DNA from: Mobula birostris
Lineage: Eukaryota
Assembly: GCF_030028105.1 (NCBI RefSeq)
Contig: NC_092399.1
Span: 32,508,881 to 32,572,880, forward strand
Reading direction: 5' to 3'
Length of the DNA stretch: 64,000 nucleotides
Shown: piece after piece, positions 12,610 to 46,172 of the stretch
How the letters are laid out: each line of letters opens with the position of its first letter
Position numbering within the stretch: the first letter of the stretch is position 1
Notes under the pieces: model-generated
Told to the model about the DNA's origin: nothing
The model's database searches: none
What the model saw: only the letters and a program-made list of their open reading frames with translations
Position numbers and translations under genes: made by a program

Positions 12610-14345
12610 GTTCTGTCGTTGGCAAATTTATAGATGGTGCTTGATCTGTGCCTCGCCACACAATCGTGGGTATAGAGATTAGGACAGTGGGCTAAGCACG
12701 CATCCTTGAGGTACACCAATGTTGATTTTTAGCGAGGAGATGTTATTTTGGATCTGCACATACAGTGGTCTCCCAGTGAGCAAGCCAAAGATTCATTTGT
12801 AGAGGGAGGTACAGAGGCCCAGGTTTTGGAGCTTGTTGGTTAGAATTGAGGATGTGTTCAACGCTGAGCTGTAGTCAATGAACAGCAGCCTGACTTAGGT
12901 TACTGCAATTGTCCGGGTGATCCAAGGCCGAGTGGAGAGTCAGTGAAATTGCATTCGTTGTAAACCTATTAAGACACATCTGGATAGCAGTAACAGGATT
13001 GGATTTATGAAGGGGAAATGGTGCTTGACTAATCTTCTGGAATTTTTTGAGGATGTAACTACAAAAATGGACAAGGGAGAGCCAGTGGATGTGGTGTACC
13101 TGGACTTTCAGAAAGCCTTTGATAGAGTCCCACATAGGAGATTAGTGGGTAAAATTAGGGCACATGGTATTGGGGGCAGAGTACTGACATGGATTGAAAA
13201 TTGGCTGGCTGACAGAAAACAAACAGTAGCGATTAATGGGTCCCTTTCGGAATGGCAGGCGGTGACCAGTGGGGTACCACAGGGTTCAGTGCTGGGACCG
13301 CAGCTGTTTACAATATATATTAATGATTTAGATAAGGGAATTAAAAGTAACATTAGCAAATTTGCCAATGACACAAAGCTGGGTGGCAGTGTGAAATGTG
13401 AGGAGGATGTTATGAGAATGCAGGGTGACTTGGACAGGCTGGGTGAGTGGGCAGGTGCAGTTTAATGTGGATAAATGTGAGGTTATCCACTTTGCTGGTA
13501 AGAACAGGAAGGCAGATTATTATCTAAATGGTGTCAAGTTAGGAAAAGGGGAAGCACAACAAGATCTAGGTGTTCTTGTACATCAGTCACTGAAAGCAAG
13601 TATGCAAGTACAGCAGGCAGTGAAGAAAGCTAATGGCATGCTGGCCTTCATAACAAGGGGAATTGAGTACAAGAGCAAAGAGGTCCTTCTGCAGCTGTAC
13701 AGGGCCCTGGTGAGACCATACCCGGAGTACTGTGTGCAGTTTTGGTCTCCAAATTTGAGGAAGGATATTCTTGCTATTGAGGGAGTGCAGCGTAGGTTCA
13801 CAAGGTTAATTCCCGGGATGGCGGGACTGTCATATGTCGAAAGATTGGAGCGACTGGGCTTGTATACTCTGGAATTTAGAAGGCTGAGAGGGGATCTTAT
13901 TGAAACATATAAGATTATTAAGGGATTGGACACGCTGCAGGCAGGAAGCATGTTCCCACTGATGGGTGAGTCCAGAACCAGAGGCCACAGTTTAAGAATA
14001 AGGGGTAGGCCATTTATAATGGAGTTGAGGAAAAACTTCTTCACCCAGAGAGTGGTGGATATATGGAATTCTCTGCCCCAGAAGGCTGTGGAGGCCAAGT
14101 CTCTGGATGCTTTCAAGAAAGAGATGGATAGAGCTCTTAAAGATAGCGGAATCAAAGGTTATGGGGATAAAGCAGGAACTGGATACTGATTGTGGATGAT
14201 CAGCCATGATCACAGTGATGGCAGAGCTGGCTCGAAGGGCCGAATGGCCTACTCCTGCACCTATTGTCTATTATGGCAACAGGAAAATTGAAAATGGCCC
14301 AGGTCCTTGCTTAGGCAGGAGTTGATTCTAGCCATGACCAACCCA
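12610..14345 (-). mobile_element. Rex1/Babar-like RT fragment interrupted by the CR1 at 12970-14272
   Basis: Reverse frames give LTLHSALDHPDNCSN and related Rex1 RT motifs; the sequence resumes after the CR1 tail. Confidence 0.7.
12970..14272 (+). mobile_element. CR1 LINE, 5'-truncated RT domain plus 3' UTR, frameshifted
   Basis: ORFs 13007-13465 (VYLDFQKAFD, GVPQGSVLGP, KFANDTKL) and 13425-14189; same tail as 718-1526. Confidence 0.95.
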
Positions 14346-16770: not shown

Positions 16771-16852
16771 TGGTGGCTGAGTTGAAGAAGCTGTTCCCCT
16801 GCGCCATCAGGAGATGCTTTTGAAGCGGATGATTGCAGCACTGCAAAGAAGA

Positions 16853-17080
16853 GAAAACCTGCAGATGCTGTAAATCCAAGCAACACACACAAAATGCTGG
16901 AGGAACTCAGCAGGCCAGGCAGTGTCTATGGGAAGAAAGTACAGTTGATGTTTCGGCCCGAAACAAAGAGATTTTCTCTTGTTTGTGTGGAAGCGTTTCA
17001 GCCCAAAACATCAACCGTACTTTTTTCCACAGATGCTGCCTGGCCTGCAGAGTTCCTCCAGCATTTTGTGTGTGGCTGCA
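16853..17080. repeat. Penelope-derived palindromic (fold-back) element
   Basis: About 90-bp inverted arms (cacacaaaatgctggaggaactc.../...gagttcctccagcattttgtgtg) related to the Penelope termini near 25070-25155. Confidence 0.8.
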
Positions 17081-24562: not shown

Positions 24563-25158
24563 ATCATTTTAATTCCACGTCCCATTCCCATTCTGACATG
24601 TCTATCCACGGCCTCCTCTACTGTAAAGATGAAGCCACACTCAGGTTGGAGGAACAACACCTTATATTCCGTCTGGGTAGCCTCCAACCTGATGGCATGA
24701 ACATCGACTTCTCTAACTTCCGCTAATGCCCCACCTCCCCCTCGTACCCCATCCGTTATTTATTTATATACACATTCTTTCTCTCTCCCTCTTTTTTCCC
24801 CCTCTGTCCCTCTGACTATACCCCTTGCCCATACTCCGGGCTTCTCCCCTCCCTCTTGTCTTTCTCCCTGGACCTCCTGTCCCATGACCCTCTCATATCC
24901 CTTTTGCCAATCACCTGTCCAGCTCTTGGCTCCATCCCTCCCCCTCCTGTCTTCTCCTATCATTTTGGATCTCCCCCTCCCCCTCCCACTTTCAAATCTC
25001 TTACTAACTCTTCCTTCAGTTAGCCCTGACAAAGGGTCTGGGCCCGAGACATCGACTGCACCTCTTCCTGGAGATGCTGCCTGGCCTGCTGCGTTCACCA
25101 GCAACTTTGATGTGTGTTGCTTGAATTTCCAGCATCTGCAGATTTCTTCATGTTTGCT
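24563..25158 (+). mobile_element. Penelope-like element 3' portion (GIY-YIG C-terminus plus pseudo-LTR)
   Basis: HFNSTSHSHSDMSIHGLLYCKDEATLRLEEQHLIFRLGSLQPDGMNIDFSNFR*; pyrimidine-rich tail; degenerate hammerhead near 25020-25058; possible TSD gtttaact. Confidence 0.88.
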
Positions 25159-30169: not shown

Positions 30170-32225
30170 GGGATGTCTCAGAGCGGCTTGACAGCATTCT
30201 AGAGGGGCAGGGTGATCAGCTGGAAGTTGTGGTACATATTGGTACCAATGACATAGGTAGAAAAGGGGATGAGGTCCTGAAGAGAGAATGTAGGTAGTAA
30301 GGTAAAAAATTGAAAAGCAGGATCTCAAAGGAAGTAATCTCTCGATTGCTGTTTTTGCCATGCACCAGTGAGAGTAAGAATAGGATGATTTGGCAGATGA
30401 ATGTGTGACTAAGGAATTGGTGCAGTAGGCAGGGTTTTGGATTTCTGGATCATTGGATCTCTTCTGGAGAAGGCATGACTTCTACAAAAAGGACGGGTTA
30501 TTCCTAAGCAACATACACAAAATGCTAGAGGAATTCAGCAGGTCGGGCAGCATTTATGGTAAAGTGTAAAGTTTCAAGCCTGGACCATTCTTCTGGACTG
30601 GAAAGGAAGGGGGAAGATGCCAGAATAAAAAGGTGAGGGGAGGGGAAGTAGGTCATACTGAACTTGAGGGGGACCAATGTCCTTTTGGGCAGATTAGCTA
30701 GAACTGTCGGGGAGGGTTTAAACTAACCTGGCAGTGGATTAGGAACTTGAGTGATTGGGCAGAAGATGGGGCGATTGGTACACAGGAAGATGCAGTGTGT
30801 AGTTTATAAAGGGATAAGAATTTAATTCTGGTAACATGGAGGCAAAATAGAAAAGAGTGATGAATACAGGACTGAAAGTGTTACATTTGAATGCACACAG
30901 TACATGGAATAAAGCTGATCTTGGAATGCACTTAGAGACTGGCAGGTGTGACAATATGGACATCACTGAGTTGTGGCTGAAAGATCATAATTGAGAGCAT
31001 AACTGTATCAACAGGACAAGCAGGTAGGCAGAGGGGTGAGGTGTCTCTGGTGGTAATAAATTAAATCATTAGAAAGAGGTAACATGGGATCAAAAGGTGT
31101 AGAATTCTTGTAGGTAGAGTTAAGAAGGTGCAAGGGTAAAAGGTCCCTGAGGAAACCGGAGCACACGGAGGAAACCCACGTGGTCTCAGAGAGAATGTGT
31201 ACAGTCCTCACTGGCAGCGGCGGGAATCGAACCCGGATCGCTGGGCTGTAAGGTGACCACTGCACTGCCGTGCCACCCCAAAAGGGGGGCCATTTCCAGT
31301 TGGCTGCTAGTGGCTAGTTGTATTCCACAGGGGTTTGTGTTGGGACTGCTCCTTTTCATTTTATATGTCAATGATTTGGACGATGGAATTGATGGCCAGG
31401 CTTGCAGATAGTGCAAAGATAGGTGGAGAGGCAGGTTATTTTGAGGAAGCATGGAATCTGCAGAAGGGAAATGAGTAAAAAGGTGGCAGATGGAATATAA
31501 TGTAGGGAAGTGTGTGGTCATGCACTTTGGTAAAAAGAATAAAAGCATAGACTATAATGGGGAGAAAATTCAAAACTCAGAGGTGCAAAGGGACTTGGGA
31601 GTCTTAGTGCAGGATTTCCTAAATGTTAACTTGCAGGCTGAGTCGGAGGTAAGGGAAGCAAATGCAATGTTAGCACTCATTTCAAGTGGACTAGAATATA
31701 AACACAAGGATGTAACGCTGAGGCTTTATAAGGCATTCCCTGTCGAATGGGTGGGTTTTCTCTGGGTGCTCCAGTTTTATCCCACAGTCCGAAGTTGTAC
31801 CGGTTAGTAGGTTAAATGATTATTGTAAGTTAACCTGTGATAGGTTGGGGTTAAATCGGAGGTTGTCAAGGTTGCTGGGTGGCGTGGCTCGAAGGGCAAG
31901 AGGGGCATATATTCTGCACTGTGTTTCTAAATAAATGAAGTATTTCCTGTGGTGGGAGAGTCTACGACTAGAGGGCACAGCCACAGAATACAAAGATGTC
32001 CCTTTAGAACAGAGATGAGGAGGAATTTCTTTAGCCTGTGGGTGTGACTCCTGTGGAGGCCAAGTCATTGGGTACATTTAAAATGGAGGTTGATAGGTTC
32101 TTGATTAGTACGAGTGTCAAATGTTATGGGGAGAAGGCGGGAGAATGGGGTTGAGGGGGATAAAACGATGGAACTGTGGAACAAACTCAATAGGCTGAAT
32201 GGCCCAATTCTGCTCCTATGTCTTG
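30170..32225 (+). mobile_element. Fragmented long CR1 (ORF1 end, APE, RT, 3' UTR) with Penelope and SINE insertions
   Basis: LKVLHLNA and DITELWL (APE); PQGFVLGLLLF and MEYNVGKCVVMHFG (RT); SINE pieces at 31147-31280 (-) and 31735-31935 (+). Confidence 0.8.
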
Positions 32226-34058
32226 GGGTTTAAGTTTAAACTATTTTCTGGACAGGAGCTGTTGTTTTTGAATCTCACTTTTATGCACATGACATTATTT
32301 TCACTTACCTGTTGCTTTGCATTGCAACATCAGAGTGTCAGGCTGCCCCCAGCATATCCTTAGGCGTATTGGTTGCTAATGCAAATGATGCATTTCATTG
32401 TATGTTAACATGGACATGTGATAAATAAATCTGAATCATCACAATCACACACCTCCCCTTCCCATGCAGTACGGTTTTTATACAGTTCTGATGAAATGTC
32501 TGTGTGCAGTATTAGCTCGGATTCTTCCCCTGCAAGTGCTAGGCAACCTGATCTGCATTTCAAGTTTATTGTCGTTCAACCACATGTATACAGCTAAGTG
32601 AAACATCGTTGCTCTAGGCTGAGTGCAGAACACAGTACATTACATACAGCATTCATAATTATGATTCAGCATACATAATCACAAAATAATACTAGCACAA
32701 GTGCCTGAGTGGCAAGGCCTGAACATTGACATAAAGTTGGAGGTGCACCTTTAAAGGTTACGAAGGTACATTTAATGTCAGAGAAATGTATACAATATAC
32801 ATCCTGAAATTCTTTTTCTTTGCAAACATCCACGAAAACAGAGGAGTGCCCCAAAGAATGACAGTTAAATGTTAGAACCCCAGCTACCCCCTCCCACACG
32901 TAAGCAGCAGCAGCAAAGCAATGACTCCCTCTCCCCCACCAGCAAAAAAAAGCATCGGCACCTCCCATCGAGCACTCAAGCATGCAGCAAAGCATCAATA
33001 ATGACACAGACTTGCAGTACCCCAAAGACTACTCATTCACCCAGAATTCGACATACCACCGGCTCTCCCTCTCTCCCTAATAAGGGAGAAAGAGGCATCC
33101 CCGTAAGTTGGTATAACGTGATTAGCACTATTATAATAAAGTACAGTTATTATCGAAGTATGTATGTAGTGTACATCCCTGGAATTTGTCTTATCCACAG
33201 ACAGTCACAAAGCAAAGGACCCAACCCGTTCAAAGAAAAGCATCAAACATCAACCCCCCCCCTCCACCGCGCAAAAAAGATCACACAAACAGCAACAAAA
33301 AATAAGCGAGTGAAAATGCTAAATGTAAGACACAAAATCAAAAGGCACGTTTCAGCTCTGTTCAGCTCAGCGTTCATTACCTGCAGTCTGCCCCGGTTCA
33401 AAAATCACCCAAAAAGTAATAATGAGCTAGAACTAGAGACTGAGCACATCATAAAGTCCAAATCTACAACCCGTGTCGATTGAACCTTGCTCTGTCACGA
33501 TCCGCCGAGAGAGAGAAAAGTCACTGGAACGTAAGGACCTTCAGGAACCGCGCCATGCGCAGACGCCTTCTCCGACAGTGGCGAGCAAGAGGCTGGTAAA
33601 CGGTGCTAATTAGAAAGCAGCAGCAGTAAAAGCTGAAAAGTGGCTAGCGCAAGATGAGAGTGGAGGGGGGCGTGCAGGGGCACAGCAGGACCGTCAGGAC
33701 AGGATGTACATGTGTGCTGGGTGGCAGCGGGGTTTTAAGGGGTCTAACAGCACTTCTTATTTATTTAAGAGATTGCCAGCCTCTGCACAGAGTTGCTCTT
33801 GTAGAACAATCCTCACATGTTCACAGTCTGATCGACACTGTCATCCCAGCATTCCAGGTCCAGCCAGGAGCCGCTCCTTGCTGTTGTTCACCACCCCCTG
33901 CTGCGGAATGAAATGTCACTATCAGGAGCACGAGTTCAGCTTGGCTACTCTTTGCATTGCCTTGCCTTATTGCCCAATCCAATTTCAGCAGTGTATAGTT
34001 ACATTTAAATGGGTGGAATATGGAGATACTGAACACATTCTTCACTTAAAACAAACAA

Positions 34059-34228
34059 GACAAAATCTGCAGATGCTGGAAATCCAAGCAACACACACAA
34101 AATGCCGAAGGAACTCAGCATCTGTGGAACAGAATAAACAGTCGATGTTTTGGGCCGAGACATCGACTCTTTACTCTTTTCCGTAGGTGCTGCCTGGCCT
34201 GCTGAGTTCCTCCAGCATTTTGTGTGTG
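34059..34228. repeat. Penelope-derived fold-back element
   Basis: Same inverted arms as 16853-17080. Confidence 0.75.
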
Positions 34229-34614
34229 ATTCTTCACTTATAATATGCTTTCTCTCTCAATGCCAAAGAAATTACTGTGACATCGTAGGAATTATTTGCA
34301 GCAAGCAGTGATGGAATTTCTTCCATTGCCTCTAAGATGCCCTTCAAAGTCTGCTATTTTACCATACTTTTAGTTACCTTTTGTAAAACATTCTTATGAC
34401 TGGGTGTCAAATATTGATAATGTTCCTGTGAAATGATGCGTTTTTCCCTGAGAAGTGATGTGTAAATGTACGCAGTTATTGAACTGAACAGGGTCAATGA
34501 GTAGTCGTCAAGGGTTGTTGGAAGTGCGGGAAGGGAATAATGTGGATTAATAGTCAGAGATTCTCTTCTCAAAATGATGGAGTGAACAAAATTTTGGCCA
34601 GGATTTTCCATTGC

Positions 34615-37024: not shown

Positions 37025-37745
37025 ATTATAATAAATTCTTCATTGATCCCGAGTGAGAAATTATTTTGCTACAGCAGCAACATTTAAAAACACACTTAGC
37101 AGTGTTCAGACTTAACTAGTAATAAAGTACAGAATAATAATACTCAATAATAATGTACCAAATGATAAAACAGAGACTATTGTACTATGATGTGTGTTCT
37201 CCTGTTGCACAGAGATGAACTGCTGTATATGCTTATTGCATTTGGTAGGAAAGATTTTCTGTAACGATACTTGTGGCAGCGGAGCTGAATAAGCCTGTTC
37301 GAAAGGGTGCTCCGCTGCTTCTTCAGTAGGTCACGGAGAGGATGTGCCAGATTGTCCATAATGGATAACAGTTTATTTAGTGACCTCCTCCCCACCACTA
37401 ACTCAAAAGAGTCTGGGTTGTAGCCAAGGACAGATCCAGCCTTTTTGATGAGTTTCTTTAGTCTTTTTGCATTACCAGCACCAATGCTGCTCCCCCAACA
37501 TAAAGCTGCAAAAGAAGACTGCACTCGTTACCACAGACTGGTAAAAGATCTCCAACATCCTGCTGCATACATTGAAGGATCTCGTCTTCCTTAGAGTCTG
37601 CTCATCTGCTTCTTGTAAAGAGCCTTGGTGTTGGTTTTCCGCTCAATTCTGTTGACAAGGTGAATATCCAAGTGAGTTCCTCCACCAGCGCAACTTCTTC
37701 TCCCAGAAAGTATAAGGACTCGTCAGTCCTCTTCCTCCTAAGATC
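37025..37745 (-). mobile_element. Rex1-like LINE 3' fragment
   Basis: ORF 37177-37524 FAALCWGSSI...IMDNLAHPL...RYRKSFLPNAISIYS. Confidence 0.8.
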
Positions 37746-37969
37746 AATCACATAGCAGGCCCAGCACTCACTAACCCTAACCTGTGCATCTTCAGAATGT
37801 GGGAGGAAACCAGAGCCCCCAGAGGAAGCCCAGTGGTCACGGAGAGAATGTACGAACTCCTTACAGACAGCGGAGGGATTGAACCCCAGTCTTACAGCTG
37901 GCACTGTATTGACATTACTCTAACTGCTCCACTGCTGTGCCAGTGGGAATGGACATCATTGTATAGTTA

Positions 37970-40900
37970 GCAGTTGCCGAGATCGAGTGTAGAGGCCCAC
38001 TGAAGAGAAGCTTGGGGAAACTCCCAACCCTCTCTGCAGGTGCTTGTTGGTTTTCCTCTACGGCAGTCATGGGGAACTCATAAAGTGCGAAGAGCCAGAG
38101 AAGCCTGGGCAGAATGCCGTATTGGTACAGCCAGGTCTTGAATTTACCGGGAAGTCTGGATTTGTCGATCTTCTTCAGCCATTCGTCTGTCTGATTCACA
38201 GCATTGGTGACATTGGCCCCATCTGTCAGTGACACATTAAACCACTTCCCCAAACATTTTATCAGGTTATCTTCAATGGAAGGGATGACCTCACCCTGAA
38301 CTTGGAGGCTAAACTTGCTAGTAACTTTGCTGTTTCTGATCACCGTGCACCTGGACTTCTTGGCCTTGAAGGACATCCTCGTCCAAGTGGTTACATTACC
38401 CAGGGTTTCCAATACCCATCTTGCTTGGTCATGTGACACAGTTGTTCTAGTGATCTCGTCCATGAACCCTCGTAGAGCCGGCTGAACAATGCCTGACTCT
38501 AGTGTCGGGTCGGGGGTTACATCTTCTGCTGCAGATGATAGGAGGTTCATTCCCATAATAAATAGGATGGGGGAGATGGTGCACCCTGTCGAAATCCCCT
38601 TCTGGAGGTCCTGCCAACTAGTTGTGAAATGAGCTGCTGTAAATCTGAGTTTGAATCCTCCTAGGTAGCTGGTGATCATGTCTCAAATAGTCACTGGGAT
38701 GTGGTAGTGGTCGAGTCCTTCTAGGATAAGGTCATGTGGAATAGACCCGTAGGCATTCGCGAGGTCTAACCAGACAACTGTTAGGTCGCCTTTTTTCTGC
38801 TTGGCCTCACAGATCAAATGGCTAATCATTGAGGTGTATTCCAGACACCCCGAAAAGCCCGGAATACCGCCTTTCTGGATGGATGTGTTGATATAGCGGT
38901 TCTGCATCATGTAAGAAGTCAGCCTTCTTGCGAGCACAGAAAAGAAAATCTTACATTCCACATCCAGGAGAAAAATTGTCCTAAACTGGGCAATTGTGGA
39001 AGAAGCCTCTCCCTTTGGAATAAAGCATCCTTCTGCCAATTTTCAACTTGATGGAATAGTACCTTTGGCCCAGATCTTTCTCATGACCTTCCACAGCCTC
39101 CCAAGAAGTTTTGAGCATTTCTTATACACCTTATAAGGTATGGTGCTTGGACGCGGGGCAGCTGATGCTTTAGCTTTCCGGATGATGTCCTGGATTTCCT
39201 GCCATGTAGGCTCCTTCACATTCAGCTCAATTGATGGATTTTCCGGTCTACGCACAGCCCGATTGGTTCCTGGTCCCTGGCCCCTCCGTGGGTCACTGTG
39301 TGCCTCCCGCAGGAACTCCTCTCCCTCTGGCTTCGAGCTGGATAGCATACCAGATTTTTGTTGGCCCAGAAGAGTCCTGGTGAAGCTGAATGGATCTCTC
39401 ACAAACTGCGCTCGCCTTTTCTCTTTCTTCCTTCTTTGCTGTCGCAGATGTTCCGCCCTCCGGAGTTTGCACAGCTTTTCCCGCAGAATACTGGTTAAGT
39501 CCTTGATGCCTTCTTTTTCAGCTGGTGAGCTGGTTTTAAACCTCTTCTTGAGTGCCTTTAATTCGCCTCTCAAGCAACGAATCTCTGTTTCTCTCCTATC
39601 TGGTTGCCGCAGTAACTCCATCTGGCTTCTCCGCCCCACTGGGCCAAATCGTTCCTTAGCCAGATTTTACGCTATGGCTGTGAGTGAGTCGATCTTTCTG
39701 TCTACTGGACCCGCTAAGGCAACTTCCAGGATGCCGTCTAGATCATCATCGAACTGCATCCAGGCGATGTTGTCTGACGATCTAGGCCAATTGATCCTGT
39801 CTTTCCCTGATGAATGGATCGGGGTAGCTGAAGAGGAACTCACTTGGTCTGTTGTTCGGTGCTGAGGCGACTCAAGTGCGGAGAGATCTTCAGCTCTGTG
39901 GGGTGCTTCCTGGCTGGAATTCTCCTGCGTCTCACCGGACACTAAGTCTGTGTGCTGCACTTGGGTCACCATTGATCCACATCTAGACTTGCTCTGGTGT
40001 ATCTTGAGCCCTCTGATGTTTTTGCAGACTTTCCCGCAATGACACCTTACTGTGAATTCCTCTCCGGTCAGTGTTGTTTGCTTTAGCTTCCTTGTAGTCG
40101 TGTTTCCTGTCCTGGCCGTTGCCGGTATGACAGTCCTGTTGAGTCTCTCATCCTCCCCCACCTCTCGGGAGACTCTGGGGGTATTGCTGTTCGTGTTCAG
40201 TTGTAGCTTGAGTGGTGCCCTCTTGTGAGTGCTGTCCACAAGGTTGCTAGCCTTGTGAGCCCGTGCCAGTCTTTCCTGGAGGTCAGCTGTCTCTCCAGTG
40301 TCACCAACCTTCCTCGGTTGCCATCCAGTCTTTCCTGGAAGCCACTGGTACAAACCAGAGATTACTTGTTACATACACCTGTGAGGGTGCATTCTCCAGT
40401 TACCTTATAAGGTAACCGTAGTCTTCAGCCAGGAGCAGATGTCATCAGGTGGTTCCCAACCTTCACCGAGTGTTTCGACCCTTAACCACGACACTCTCCA
40501 GTTGGTGGGCCGGCAGTGGTGGCCAAATCACTGCCCATCTGCTCCTGGCTTTCAGCTCCCCTCCTCTCGCCTACTCCAAATCCAACAAGAAGCTCGTTCT
40601 GCCTCTTCCCCCATCCTACGAGCTGCTTGTTTTTTGCTCCTATCGTCCAGGCCCAGATCTGACAACAACCGCCACGCTGATTTGGCTGGGAAACCTCTGC
40701 AGCTGATCTCCACAGGGAACAACCATGCCTGCCATCCCTTGTCTTTACACTCCTGCACTAAGGGCTGGTACTTCAAGGCCCTCTCTCGTGGGCCTCTTCC
40801 CATCCCTCCTCCCACGGCACAGTCAGCTCAACCAGAATTACTTTCCTGCCTTCGGTTGACCACAGTACAATGTCCGGGCGTAGGGTTGTGTACACCACAT

Positions 40901-41345
40901 CCGGGAACTGCAACCTCCTTCCCACATTGACCCTCATCTCCCAGGACCTGGCCGTTAGCAGCAGATTGGGCTTTGGTTGTTTGGTTACGAAAGGCCTGGC
41001 TCCCTCTTTGATGAAGGTGATGGCCTTCCTCAAATCTGTGCCAGCCGTCCTCTTCTTGCATCTCTCCCGCTGTAGTGCGTCAGCAAGAGCCAGAAGCACC
41101 TTATCATGGCGCCACCTATACCGTCCTTGAGTTAGAGCTGTTTTACACCCGGACAGTATATGAGCCAGTGTCCCCTTTTGACCACAGAGCTTACAGTTCG
41201 GGTCCTCTCTCATCCCCCATGTGTACAGATGTAATGGTAAAGGAAGGGTGTCATACACGGATCGCAAGAGGAAGGAAATACGGAAGGGCTCCAGTCTCCA
41301 TAACTCTGCCCATGAGATCTTGCACTTGGGCAGATCCCATTTTGT
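37970..41345 (-). mobile_element. HERO-like (R2 superfamily, restriction-like endonuclease) non-LTR retrotransposon, permuted order, inactivated
   Basis: N-terminal zinc finger CHCGKVCKNIRGLKIHQSKSRC; RT motifs QFRTIFLLDVECKIFF, QKGGIPGFSGCLE, WLDLANAYGSIPH, GCTISP, FMDEIT; zinc knuckle CKLCGQKGTLAHILSGC, RWRHD, RPDIV, ILVELTVPWEE. Several stops and frameshifts. Confidence 0.88.
40427..40550 (-). ncRNA. Predicted non-circularly permuted hammerhead ribozyme; predicted cleavage after GUC between 40490 and 40489
   Basis: Intact CUGAUGA (40448-40442), GAAA (40476-40473) and GUC cores with complementary stems I (GUGGUU/AACCAC), II (GGCCC/GGGUC) and III (GAGUG/CACUC), enclosed by a perfect 15-bp stem. 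Confidence 0.75.
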
Positions 41346-41398
41346 TAAGTTACCGTATAAGTTACTGTATTTCCCAGCTAATAATTTCTTTTGTAACA

Positions 41399-41587
41399 GA
41401 CACACAAAATGCTGGAGTAACCCAGCAGGTCAGGCAGCATCTATGAAGAGGAATAAAGAGTTGGCTTTTCAGGGTGAGACCCTTGATGAAGAACCACAGA
41501 TTCTGCCTGACCTGCTGAGTTCCTCCAGCATTTTGTGTGTGTTACTCTTAGATTTTCAGCATCTGCAGTTTCTCTTGTGTTTGTTAA
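41399..41587. repeat. Penelope-derived fold-back element
   Basis: Inverted arms cacacaaaatgctggag and ctccagcattttgtgtg. Confidence 0.75.
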
Positions 41588-41619
41588 ACACTTTTTCTTT
41601 TGGGTTTAGCTTTGTTGTT

Positions 41620-41842
41620 GAGACCCGGCTGGGGGAGTTCGAATCCAGCCGGCTCCCCTGCACGCTTTCCATCCGTGCTGGGTTACGAGCTGGTGATCTC
41701 TTTGGAAACTCACCCAGCAGAAGGCAATGGTAAACCACTGCTGTAAATTGCCTCATACGCGGTTCCCCACTACGTCAGAGAGGCGTGGTGGGAAATCGTC
41801 CACTAACCGGAGAAACTCCAGATGCGAAGTACCTTTCCTTTT
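41620..41842 (+). mobile_element. SINE with tRNA-like B box and RTE-related body
   Basis: gagttcgaatcc B box; the body from tggtgatctcttt onward is shared with the 3' part of 35769-36286. Confidence 0.7.
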
Positions 41843-43230
41843 GTTGTTGAGGAGTATGCATTTGTAAGAACTTTACTTCTTTAAAAAGAATCATAGAGTT
41901 TGTAATATGAGGTCAGACAGATCATTGTTTTAAGTCCAATTCAAAGTTGGGCACCTGAAACAAGTACGGGTCTGTACTGGAAGATCAACCCAGATTCCCT
42001 GAACACAAGGGACGGCTGGGCAGCTGGGGCAAAATCAGACTGCCGGAGAAACTCAACAGCTCAGGCAACATCTGTGGAGGCAAAAGGATGATCAGTGTGT
42101 TGGGTTGGAACCCTGTATCAGGCTGAGTACAAGGAGGTGGGTGGGAGGGTAGAGGTAGGAGCTAGCAGGTGATAGGTGTAACCAGGTGAGGAAGAAGATG
42201 ATGGCCAGATGGAGTTAGTTGTGGGGGGGAGAGGGAGGGTCGGTTGGGTGATGGGGTGGGGGGGGGCGATATGATAAGTGGAAACTCAGGGAGCTGCAGA
42301 TGCTGAATCTTTTAAATATGGAAGGTGGTAGGTGGAACCAGCTAAGGGAGGGATGGGAACAGATGGAACCAGAAGGCGTTATGAGTGGGTGACAGGAGGT
42401 TGGAACCACTGGTGGAAGGAGAGGCTAGCCACAAAATCCTGGGAACTACTGTGACTGCTCTCCTGAGATGAACAGGTGCCCGCCTCACCACCCCCAGGCT
42501 TGGGGGCACGGGTACGCAATATTTTTTTTCTTTCTTTCTGCCTCCTTTACCCAGGCCATTTCACAAGGCCGTTTTACAGATCGCCTGAGTTGCTTTGAGC
42601 CATTTAAGAGTTAACAGAAGTTCTGCCGCAGCTGATGTTCCCAGTGTTTCTTGCCTTTACAGCGTGAGGTCTGCTCAGTTCAGACCAGATACACACACAT
42701 GCCCAAGTAGCAGAGATCATGAGGTCCATGCCAAGTTCTTGACTTGATTGATGAATACGTACATACACAGAATCCCCAGACAGGCTAATAACATACAATT
42801 TATGTAACTGTTTGATCTAGGTGCTGCTCATTATAGTCAATAATACTGTATGGAGACAGTGATGGGGGCAAAAGCTCTCAACAACAATTAGTAACTTTAT
42901 TGGTTGCTATATAATTTGAGTAAAAATCTTTCTGGGTATCCATTCTAACCTGATCCAACTTGAAAAAAGCTGCCCTTCGCATAATTATTTAGAGCTGAGA
43001 ATTAATATAATATACATGCCAGAGAAAATGGCGCCTTGCTCCAGTGTGTCTATCATACCCATACATTACCATGGTTATGATACTAGCAACTGAGTTCAAA
43101 TCCCATCACAGGATGTTTGAATACTTAAATTCAGTTTATACGAGCTGGTAAAAGTGACCTTAAAGTGGCCTTAAGTGATCTTGAAAGAGATTAATTCTAC
43201 CTTTGTTTTACCAATTTATTCCATTCCTTA

Positions 43231-45769: not shown

Positions 45770-46172
45770 GTTTATATACACACATTCTTTTTCTCTCTCT
45801 CCTTTTTCTCCCTCTGTCCCTCTCACTATACCCCTTGCCCATCCTCTGGACTTTTTCGCCCCTCCCCCTTTGATCTTTCTCCCTGGGCCTCCTGTCTCAT
45901 GATCCTCTCATATCCCTTTTGCCAATCACCTGTCCAGCTCTTGGCTCCATCCCTCCCCCTCCTGTCTTCTCCTATCATTTCGGATCTCTCCCTCCCCCTC
46001 CCACTTTCAAATCTCTTACTAACTCTTCCTTCAGTTAGTCATGACGAAGGGTCTTGGCTCGAAACGTCAACTGTACCTCTTCCTAGAGATGCTGCCTGGC
46101 CTGCTGCGTTCACCAGCAACTTTGATGTGTGTTGCTTGAAATTCCAGCATCTGCAGATTTCCTCGTGTTTGT
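45770..46172 (+). mobile_element. Penelope-like pseudo-LTR fragment
   Basis: Near-identical to 24760-25158; hammerhead remnant gtc ATGACGA...GAAACGTC at about 46035-46073. Confidence 0.88.

What the first reader, a model, noticed from the sequence alone, without database searches (positions are those of the whole stretch)
37970..41345. HERO copy inserted as a permuted near-unit-length monomer: possible circular or concatemeric RNA template
Seen: on the minus strand the copy starts inside the C-terminal region (TKWDLPK at 41345), runs through zinc knuckle, RLE and stop, crosses the ribozyme junction, then runs through the N-terminal zinc finger and RT and ends in the thumb (GLYTRSRQL, about 37970). 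No part is present twice; the stretch linking thumb to TKW is absent. The immediate flanks read tagtta (37964-37969) and taagtta (41346-41352), a possible TSD with one indel, which would mean a single insertion event. Established: ordinary TPRT gives copies with an intact 3' end and 5' truncation. Inference: reverse transcription of a ribozyme-generated circular RNA, or of a read-through tandem transcript primed internally, as proposed for retrozymes and Penelope elements.
Basis: partly seen in the sequence, partly recalled or inferred. Interest (0 to 1): 0.85.

Follow-up and report, generated by a model that had tools for sequence, protein, structure and literature searches.

The report
Head-to-tail HERO retrotransposon remnant
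A dead copy of a HERO-type jumping gene sits here as the tail of one unit joined to the front of the next, which turns out to be this lineage's normal head-to-tail layout and not a sign of a circular RNA; only its missing rear end is unusual.

Summary
On the minus strand, 41345-37970 reads C-terminal part (zinc knuckle, RLE, stop), 3' UTR, 5' UTR, N-terminal zinc finger, RT, thumb. A 79%-identical metagenome relative (L001) has the canonical order and supplies the 346 nt missing here. Nothing is present twice.

The 3'-end/5'-end junction (about 40359/40358) is not special to this locus. In metagenome relatives, 7 of 7 assessable 5' ends are directly preceded by a HERO 3' end, and 3' ends are fixed. 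First-stage notes on other DNA of this genome describe the same partial-tandem layout; I could not check them. Adjacent units can be of separate origin: L003's two are 68% alike, L006's 90%. No circle is needed, and no evidence points to one.

The odd feature is the 3' end inside the thumb. The flanks resemble each other: an anchored 7-nt duplication with one indel occurs in 161 of 40000 random site pairs (chosen post hoc).

My reading:
- about 0.42: one target-primed event on a linear, junction-spanning template that started at an internal or broken RNA end
- about 0.30: normal head-to-tail pair plus later deletion
- about 0.07: circular RNA

The orthologous empty site was not obtainable.

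The parts
41346..41365 (-). Upstream flank GTAACTTATAC-G-GTAACTTA. The last 7 nt (41352-41346, TAACTTA) are the candidate target-site duplication. The flank loosely resembles the element's own 3' UTR hairpin region.
40552..41345 (-). Upstream partial unit, coding part: end of linker (TKWDLPK), CCHC zinc knuckle 41195-41145, RLE motifs 40880-40809, stop 40554-40552. One 1-nt deletion near 40783 shifts the frame.
   Evidence: read-laying table 4 shows other copies with an extra T at 40780/40781
40359..40551 (-). 3' UTR of the upstream unit. Conserved pseudoknotted block with hammerhead-like motifs 40548-40429 (GUC 40492-40490, GAAA within 40481-40468, CUGAUGA 40448-40442). Covarying hairpin 40417-40398. 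Tail ending about 40359.
   Evidence: no Rfam hit
40358..40359 (-). Head-to-tail junction between the 3' end of one unit and the 5' end of the next (uncertain by about 5 nt).
   Evidence: alignment A2: terminal copies L003 copy 2 and L002/L004 lose homology here, while window, L001 and the L003 junction run on into the 5' UTR
37970..40358 (-). Downstream partial unit: 5' UTR, likely start ATG 40324-40322 (out of frame here), zinc finger 40044-39979, RT (active-site box reads FMDE at 38466-38455, where five of the six full-length relatives fetched read FMDD or YMDD and one VDDM), thumb ending GLYTRSRQL 37997-37971. Three in-frame stops and several frameshifts.
37957..37969 (-). Downstream flank TAACTATACAATG. 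The first 6 nt (37969-37964) are the candidate duplication. The first 9 nt match upstream TAACTTATAC with one indel.
37760..37942 (-). tRNA-headed SINE that starts 27 nt past the HERO end. It is not part of HERO and limits how far HERO could extend.
   Evidence: (alignment with three other copies in the window)
41393..41590 (.). Very abundant palindromic MITE-like repeat 52 nt upstream of the HERO start. Not part of HERO.

Best explanation
This is an old, inactive copy of an R2-superfamily (HERO-type, RLE-bearing) LINE. It consists of two partial units joined head to tail: the last ~987 nt of one unit (41345->40359) and the first ~2,389 nt of the next (40358->37970).

Head-to-tail joining is the normal state of this lineage, so the junction needs no circular RNA.

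Most likely the whole piece entered this site in one target-primed reverse transcription event on linear RNA:
- cDNA synthesis began at an internal or broken RNA end in the thumb-coding region, not at the usual fixed 3' end.
- It ran to that unit's 5' end.
- It then continued into the 3' end of the preceding unit. That unit was either on the same read-through transcript of a head-to-tail array or on a second RNA reached by a template jump.
- It stopped at TKW, an ordinary 5' truncation.

Shown: order, boundaries, missing 346 nt, conserved junction, fixed 3' ends in relatives, flank similarity.
Inferred: that the template was RNA, that it was linear, and that the 3' truncation dates from the insertion.
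For: Canonical order and the missing 346 nt are given by L001.

The junction is conserved. Window, L001 and L003 align through the 3' UTR block, hairpin, tail and 5' UTR. Of 8 5' ends seen in 29 metagenome loci, 7 are assessable, and all 7 are directly preceded by a HERO 3' end: L001, L003 copy 2, L006, L009, L010, L012, L016. L003 copy 1 is cut by the contig start.

Flank relation:
- Best local match of the 20-nt flanks is reached by 421 of 20000 random site pairs.
- An anchored 7-12 nt duplication with at most 1 edit occurs in 161 of 40000 pairs.
- The first 9 nt of the downstream flank occur in the upstream 20 nt (at most 1 edit) in 148 of 40000 pairs.
- Both occur together in 13 of 40000 pairs.

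The two halves are equally distant from L001: 79.5% over 2377 nt and 78.2% over 794 nt.

R2 proteins jump from a finished cDNA to the 3' end of further RNA molecules and give head-to-tail repeats (PMC11371274, passages read). The full-length relative P0028 is closest to R2 proteins among solved structures. Internal initiation of reverse transcription on a junction-spanning RNA is documented for Penelope-like elements (PMC11167929, main text part 1 read).
Against: - The flank statistics were chosen after seeing the data.
- AACT in the downstream flank also matches what follows the breakpoint in L001.
- The only relative with both flanks of a composite (L009) shows no duplication.
- Relatives have fixed 3' ends, so a start inside the coding region would be a rare accident. 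Old copies often lose parts by deletion, and this one is old, with stops, frameshifts and FMDE in the RT box.
- Later insertions lie 27 and 52 nt from its ends.
- No RNA data and no empty site were available.
Confidence: 0.42

Rival explanations
1. Ordinary head-to-tail pair plus later loss. The locus first held a 5'-truncated unit followed by a unit with a normal 3' end. That pair arose either in one event or by a second HERO landing at the first one's 3' end. A later deletion then removed the last ~1.33 kb of the downstream unit, and perhaps some flank. The flank similarity is chance.
For: - Fixed 3' ends in relatives.
- Adjacent units of separate origin in L003 (68% alike in every 150-nt window) and L006 (ends 90% alike with unbroken ORF matches) show that pairs are built from separate copies.
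- Non-LTR tail-to-head and tail-to-internal tandems by repeated insertion are documented in Drosophila (PMC5932611, passages).
- The copy is old and sits among later insertions.
- The near-unit length is only a mild coincidence. By my own estimate, about 9-18% of outcomes would look like this for independent break points.
Against: The right end of the deletion would have to fall at, or within a few bases of, the original 3' flank to leave the flank match (161 of 40000 and 148 of 40000 random pairs). A microhomology deletion at AACT predicts CTGCAACTTATAC, which differs from the observed CTGCTAACTATAC by two indels.
Confidence: 0.3
2. Circular RNA template. A ribozyme-cut, ligated unit-length circle was reverse transcribed from the thumb, round through the junction, to TKW.
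For: - Length below one unit, with nothing present twice.
- A conserved structured block with hammerhead-like motifs and a GUC or GUU triplet in the 3' UTR, whose helices covary.
- Retrozyme and PLE precedents (bioRxiv 10.64898/2026.07.22.740005, abstract; PMC7761336, search listing only).
Against: - No Rfam ribozyme family matches in the window or in 8 relatives' loci.
- The strand order is not that of any natural hammerhead type, and cleavage is untested.
- The junction is explained without a circle.
- Relatives have fixed 3' ends and divergent neighbours.
- Head-to-tail pairs also occur in relatives where my pattern search found no such block (L009, L010, L012, L016, a weak negative).
Confidence: 0.07
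3. DNA-level origin. A unit-length DNA circle excised from a head-to-tail array, or a stray cDNA fragment, was linearised between thumb and TKW and captured at a chromosome break.
For: It predicts a permuted copy slightly shorter than one unit, as seen (3,376 of about 3,722 nt). Arrays that could shed circles exist in relatives (L003, L006).
Against: End joining gives no regular target duplication. There is no direct evidence, and reports of such events are rare (my recollection, not checked).
Confidence: 0.07
4. Assembly error. Reads from different HERO copies were joined.
For: HERO is highly repeated in the runs laid, and I could not verify the two flank joins.
Against: The internal junction is conserved in independent assemblies of relatives. 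The insert is only 3.4 kb. Unique-looking flanks are matched without any difference by contigs of the likely source sample at 37595-37745 and 41812-42500 (X1 records 1 and 8), though that sample is not independent support.
Confidence: 0.04

Closest known systems
Penelope-like elements: partial tandems with pseudo-LTRs, hammerhead motifs and internal initiation of reverse transcription (PMC11167929, main text part 1 read; PMC4209133, abstract in search listing)
   Same: Units stand head to tail or as a partial upstream unit plus a full unit. A hammerhead-type motif lies in the repeated terminal region. The template must span the unit junction.
   Different: The protein here is R2-like: N-terminal zinc finger, LINE-type RT, CCHC knuckle and a PD-(D/E)xK-type RLE. 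PLEs have a telomerase-like RT with a GIY-YIG nuclease. The hammerhead-like strands here are in a non-canonical order and match no Rfam model. This locus ends inside the coding region, not at a fixed 'tail'.
R2 retrotransposon: template jumping and head-to-tail products (PMC11371274, passages)
   Same: Same protein superfamily. cDNA can continue from the 5' end of one RNA onto the 3' end of another, which gives tail-to-head joins.
   Different: R2 is specific for 28S rDNA, uses an HDV-like ribozyme at its 5' end, and is not reported there as regularly head to tail in genomes. In this HERO lineage every assessable 5' end has a 3' end before it.
Tandem dimers of non-LTR elements by repeated insertion at one site (PMC5932611, passages)
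   Same: [quoted passage not shown] Neighbours may be independent copies, as in L003 and L006.
   Different: Those tandems are occasional and often carry a target duplication in the join. Here the join is precise, conserved across diverged families, and found at all assessable 5' ends.
Retrozymes, circular RNAs with hammerhead ribozymes (bioRxiv 10.64898/2026.07.22.740005, abstract; PMC7761336, listing)
   Same: Tandem units with hammerhead-type motifs, and a proposed rolling-circle or circular RNA intermediate.
   Different: Retrozymes are short and non-coding. This is an autonomous LINE, and no circular RNA or cleavage has been shown.

Membership tests
R2-superfamily (RLE-bearing) non-LTR retrotransposon | Single ORF with N-terminal zinc finger, RT, then C-terminal CCHC knuckle and PD-(D/E)xK-type endonuclease | tested here: met
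   All parts are found by homology to full-length relatives, though in permuted order and broken. Pfam RVT_1 and zf-RVT hits on the window's pieces fall below the curated cut-offs (27.4 and 23.6 against 29.6; 25.8 against 27.5). RVT_1 is above cut-off in the relatives P0028 and L001. The nearest solved structures to P0028 are R2 proteins.
HERO clade | RT groups with reference HERO elements (Repbase) in a phylogeny | not tested
No reference HERO sequences were at hand.
HERO clade | Mostly non-specific insertion, some families in microsatellites (PMC4640811, passage) | tested here: inconclusive
   Relatives have varied 3' flanks, but every assessable 5' end abuts another HERO 3' end (7 of 7). 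L002/L004 sit in a minisatellite.
Hammerhead ribozyme | Core CUGANGA and GAAA, a cleavage triplet NUH, and three helices in one of the circularly permuted orders (types I-III) | tested here: not met
   The motifs and helices I and III are present and covary. However, the strands are ordered cleavage strand, GAAA strand, CUGAUGA strand, and stem II is replaced by a three-helix junction. No hammerhead model of Rfam matches, even at E up to 10. The core definition is recalled, not taken from a call.
Hammerhead ribozyme | Self-cleavage | not testable with these tools
   Needs an in vitro transcription and cleavage assay.
Circular-RNA-templated retroelement (retrozyme-like) | Circular RNA intermediate; genomic copies with scattered, permuted ends | tested here: not met
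   Ends in relatives are fixed, not scattered. The existence of a circular RNA could not be tested because no RNA data were reachable.
Penelope-like element | Telomerase-like RT with GIY-YIG endonuclease | tested here: not met
   The protein is R2-like with an RLE. Only the genomic layout resembles PLEs.

The most novel reading that the evidence does not exclude
This RLE-bearing LINE lineage copies itself from RNA that spans unit junctions: read-through transcripts of head-to-tail arrays, processed by a rearranged hammerhead-like ribozyme and possibly circularised. On this reading the locus is a direct product of reverse transcription that went round such a template from an internal start. That would be a Penelope/retrozyme-like way of replication arising independently in the R2 superfamily.
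Probability: 0.1. Interest if true: 0.85.

Novelty: new variant of a known kind. Interest (0 to 1): 0.45.

Why it matters
The locus itself is a decayed remnant. Following it up showed that a whole HERO-type lineage regularly has a HERO 3' end directly before each 5' end. The lineage spans this genome and at least five diverged groups in marine and other metagenome contigs. In the nearer relatives, a strongly conserved, covarying RNA block with hammerhead-like motifs lies just before the junction. This layout is known for Penelope-like elements. My text searches did not find it described for RLE-bearing LINEs:
- HERO, non-LTR, restriction-like endonuclease, ribozyme
- 'HERO clade', tandem
- hammerhead ribozyme, HERO, LINE, retrotransposon, which gave 0 papers

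These searches cover open-access text only. Supplements and Repbase Reports were not visible. If the 3' truncation here dates from the insertion, the locus shows that this R2-like enzyme can start on an internal or broken RNA end. That bears on how R2-type proteins choose templates, a current question for their use in gene insertion.

Tried and rejected
Things that led nowhere:
- Rfam at gathering threshold on the window and on 8 loci, and at E up to 10 on 40250-40700. There were no ribozyme matches. The only two hits, sR10 at E 6.9 and SOX2OT at E 2.1, are at chance level.
- Read laying. All four runs were Logan contigs. The tables were filled by a hugely abundant repeat at 41416-41599, so copy ends and the orthologous site could not be read. 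Summed depth is 4-25 times higher (by run) in bin 40312-40495 than in bins 37920-40311, and lowest in 40128-40311 in all four runs. This fits a fixed 3' end near 40360 with frequent 5' truncation. The tool warns that contig depth cannot rank parts, so I do not rely on it.
- Viral contigs held no relative.
- The N-terminal piece found only 64-66% identical proteins, so no same-family copies came from the protein database.
- A search for a paralogous empty site in the window found nothing beyond 8-14 nt chance matches.

Readings I rejected:
- HERO homology continuing to about 37918 (MMSIPTGTAVEQ against LQLPxxSxVEE in tblastn). That stretch is the head of a SINE shared with three other copies in the window.
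- HERO starting at 41354 (G of 'GNLTKW' against the conserved QGxWTRW). L001 matches only 3 of the 9 nt before 41345.
- The palindrome 40417-40398 as a copy of the target site. It is a hairpin whose arms covary among relatives. The resemblance of the upstream flank to it is modest (32 of 3000 random 40-mers score as well).
- The end of L003 copy 1 being a terminal repeat that belongs to copy 2. Identity stays at 62-78% in every 150-nt window.
- Different ages of the two halves. Identity to L001 is 79.5% against 78.2%, and indels are 11 in 2377 nt against 1 in 794 nt, which is no significant difference. The list of private differences (38 of the 41 shown lie in the 5' part) is truncated to 41 of 301, so I did not use it.

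One search repeated it with a faster method.
Full report
WHAT IS THERE

On the minus strand the ORF list and sequence show the following order:
- a C-terminal piece: TKWDLPK at 41345-41325, CCHC knuckle at 41195-41145, RLE motifs RPDIVLW and ELTVPWE at 40880-40809, stop at 40554-40552
- about 190 nt of 3' UTR
- a short 5' UTR
- an N-terminal zinc finger (40044-39979), then RT and thumb, ending at GLYTRSRQL (37997-37971)

A search of 1.84 billion representative proteins with the RT/thumb piece gave 1750 hits at E up to 0.001. Among them are full-length proteins of about 1,100 aa with the canonical order zinc finger, RT, linker, CCHC, RLE. tblastn of these on the window maps P0028 aa 48-731 to 40038->37924 and aa 848-1104 to 41321->40576. 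The order is therefore permuted and about 116 aa are absent. P0028 is closest to R2 proteins among solved structures.

THE BEST YARDSTICK: L001

A scan of metagenome contigs with the C-terminal piece returned 29 loci. L001 (3,829 nt) is about 79% identical in DNA and has the canonical order:
- window 40516->37965 equals L001 1-2556
- L001 2557-2902 (346 nt) has no counterpart in the window
- window 41345->40428 equals L001 2903-3822

Base-level comparison places the window's HERO start exactly at 41345 and its end after ...CAACTGC at 37970.

Two tempting extensions were rejected. The stretch past 37970 is flank, then a SINE that starts at 37942. The 9 nt before 41345 do not match L001.

The copy is 3,376 nt of a unit of about 3,722 nt. 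L001's unit is 3,733 nt, measured from its 92-nt end repeat. Nothing is present twice, and the window holds no other HERO copy.

THE JUNCTION IS THE LINEAGE'S NORM

Aligning the window's junction with L001, L002, L003 and L004 gave three results:
- The 3' UTR block 40548-40429 is highly conserved.
- The palindrome 40417-40398 is a hairpin whose arms change in step between relatives. It is RNA structure, not a target copy.
- Terminal copies (L003 copy 2, L002/L004) keep homology for about 40 nt past the hairpin and then run into unrelated DNA. The window, L001 and the internal L003 junction run on into the 5' UTR.

The unit boundary is therefore near 40359/40358.

In tblastn of P0028 on all 29 loci, eight 5' ends (match starting at aa 46 or earlier) appear in seven loci. 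One, L003 copy 1, is cut by the contig start. In the other seven a HERO 3' end lies directly upstream:
- L001
- L003 copy 2
- L006
- L009, which carries 1,680-nt direct repeats 99.94% alike
- L010
- L012
- L016

L009, L010 and L012 are three separate copies of one family. They have three different downstream flanks, the same last base and the same precise junction.

First-stage notes on other pieces of this genome report HERO copies with direct repeats of 100 bp, 137 bp and about 180 bp, two of them described as repeats of the copy's own 3' end, and a Penelope-like partial tandem. I could not inspect those loci.

HOW ARE JUNCTIONS MADE?

Neighbours are not always products of one template. L003's two full units, both with unbroken ORF matches, are only 62-78% alike in every 150-nt window. 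L006's overlapping ends are 90% alike. At least some pairs therefore come from separately templated copies. Two routes would give this: insertion aimed at a resident 3' end, or a jump of the RT from the 5' end of one RNA to the 3' end of another. R2 proteins make such jumps readily (PMC11371274, passages). Tail-to-head tandems by repeated insertion are known for other LINEs (PMC5932611, passages). A read-through transcript of an existing pair would give the same picture. None of these routes needs a circle.

THE 'RIBOZYME'

No Rfam family matches in the window or in eight relatives' loci. The block is nevertheless a real conserved RNA. It recurs in L007 and L023, whose proteins are only 46% and 54% identical to the window's C-terminal piece.

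In seven sequences the helices keep pairing through changes on both sides:
- GGCAGTG/CACTGCC becomes GGCCGGA/TCCGGTC or GGCTGGG/CCCAGTC
- GGCCC/GGGTC becomes GGCAC/GTGCC or GGCGC/GCGCC
- GAGTGT/ACACTC becomes GGACGT/ACGTCC

The block contains CUGAUGA, GAAA and a GUC or GUU triplet, with stems that look like hammerhead stems I and III. The three strands, however, stand in an order that is not a circular permutation of the natural one, and stem II is replaced by a three-helix junction. Whether it cleaves is unknown.

Head-to-tail pairs also occur in relatives where my simple pattern search found no such block (L009, L010, L012, L016). That is a weak negative.

THE REAL ODDITY: THE 3' END IN THE THUMB

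Relatives end at a fixed 3' end, so this copy either started wrongly or lost about 1.33 kb later.

Evidence from the flanks:
- Upstream is ...ACA GTAACTTATAC G GTAACTTA | HERO.
- Downstream is HERO | TAACTATAC AATG...
- The downstream flank matches TAACTTATAC over 10 nt with one indel (421 of 20000).
- Statistics anchored at the boundaries are rarer. A 7-12 nt duplication with at most one edit occurs in 161 of 40000 pairs. The first 9 downstream bases occur within the upstream 20 in 148 of 40000. Both occur together in 13 of 40000.
- If one TAACTTA is removed, the site reads as a perfect 11-nt unit repeated twice.

Caveats on the flank evidence:
- The tests were designed after I had seen the data.
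- AACT also matches the next HERO bases in L001.
- L009's composite shows no duplication.
- The site itself is repetitive.

Other relevant points:
- The halves are equally distant from L001, so there is no sign of two ages or two families.
- The near-unit length is only a mild coincidence.
- The copy is old. It has three in-frame stops, several frameshifts, and FMDE where five of the six full-length relatives fetched read FMDD or YMDD in the RT box.
- Later insertions lie 27 and 52 nt from its ends.

VERDICT

- About 0.42: one target-primed event on linear, junction-spanning RNA that began at an internal or broken end in the thumb region.
- About 0.30: a normal pair followed by deletion.
- About 0.07: circular RNA.
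- About 0.07: capture of circular or fragmentary DNA.
- About 0.04: assembly error.
- The remainder: other origins.

The decisive evidence is the orthologous empty site and a census of copy ends in this genome.

NOVELTY

Head-to-tail LINE pairs, template jumping and Penelope-type partial tandems are all known. A lineage of RLE-bearing LINEs in which every assessable 5' end abuts a 3' end, with a rearranged hammerhead-like RNA beside the junction, did not turn up in my text searches. Those searches cover open-access text only. Supplements and Repbase Reports, which may describe HERO termini, were not visible.

The scan had already flagged this layout on other DNA of the same genome. For this locus the interest is moderate. 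Its headline claim, a circular template, is not supported. The junction is ordinary for the family, and the unusual 3' end remains unresolved.

Noticed in passing
window 40429-40548 (minus strand); L001 3682-3829, L002 8318-8466, L003 3404-3552 and 7127-7274, L007 1440-1580, L023 1422-1562: Conserved pseudoknotted RNA block in the HERO 3' UTR with CUGAUGA, GAAA and a GUC or GUU triplet. Helices covary across seven sequences, but the strand order is not that of any natural hammerhead type, and no Rfam family matches. Other first-stage notes flag the same motif.
   Followed up: partly
L003 85-3610 and 3611-7340: Two full-length HERO units with unbroken ORF matches stand head to tail, yet are only 62-78% alike in every 150-nt window. 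They are neighbours of separate origin, which suggests insertion aimed at a resident 3' end or jumps between different RNAs.
   Followed up: partly
L009 3327-5006 and 7692-9371; L010, L012: A distant HERO family has 1,680-nt direct repeats (99.94% alike), made of its own 3' part flanking the 5' part. Three separate copies share a precise junction and a fixed 3' end but have different flanks.
   Followed up: partly
L002 4303-6212 and 8715-10624; L004 2360-2560: A 5'-truncated HERO copy lies between 1.9-kb direct repeats 98.9% alike and is embedded in a minisatellite with a unit of about 60 nt. This could be a higher-order repeat or a very long duplication. It is unexplained.
   Followed up: no
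window 41346-41385 against 40398-40432 (minus strand): The upstream flank resembles the element's own hairpin region (CTTATA-GGTAACT and neighbours). 32 of 3000 random 40-mers score as well. It may be a target preference or chance.
   Followed up: partly
window 41393-41590: A palindromic MITE-like repeat with by far the highest summed contig depth in all four runs laid. Related pieces lie at about 16850-17075, 34050-34230, 30507-30560, 25061-25156 and 46076-46172.
   Followed up: no
window 37177-37524 (minus strand): A 115-aa ORF that, from memory, looks like the C-terminal tail of another LINE's ORF2. It sits downstream of the SINE at 37760-37942. I ran no search on it.
   Followed up: no
window 13070-13345 (plus strand): Weak RT-like tblastn match to HERO relatives (E 3e-5 to 7e-5, 20-26% identity). 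Probably a different retroelement remnant.
   Followed up: no
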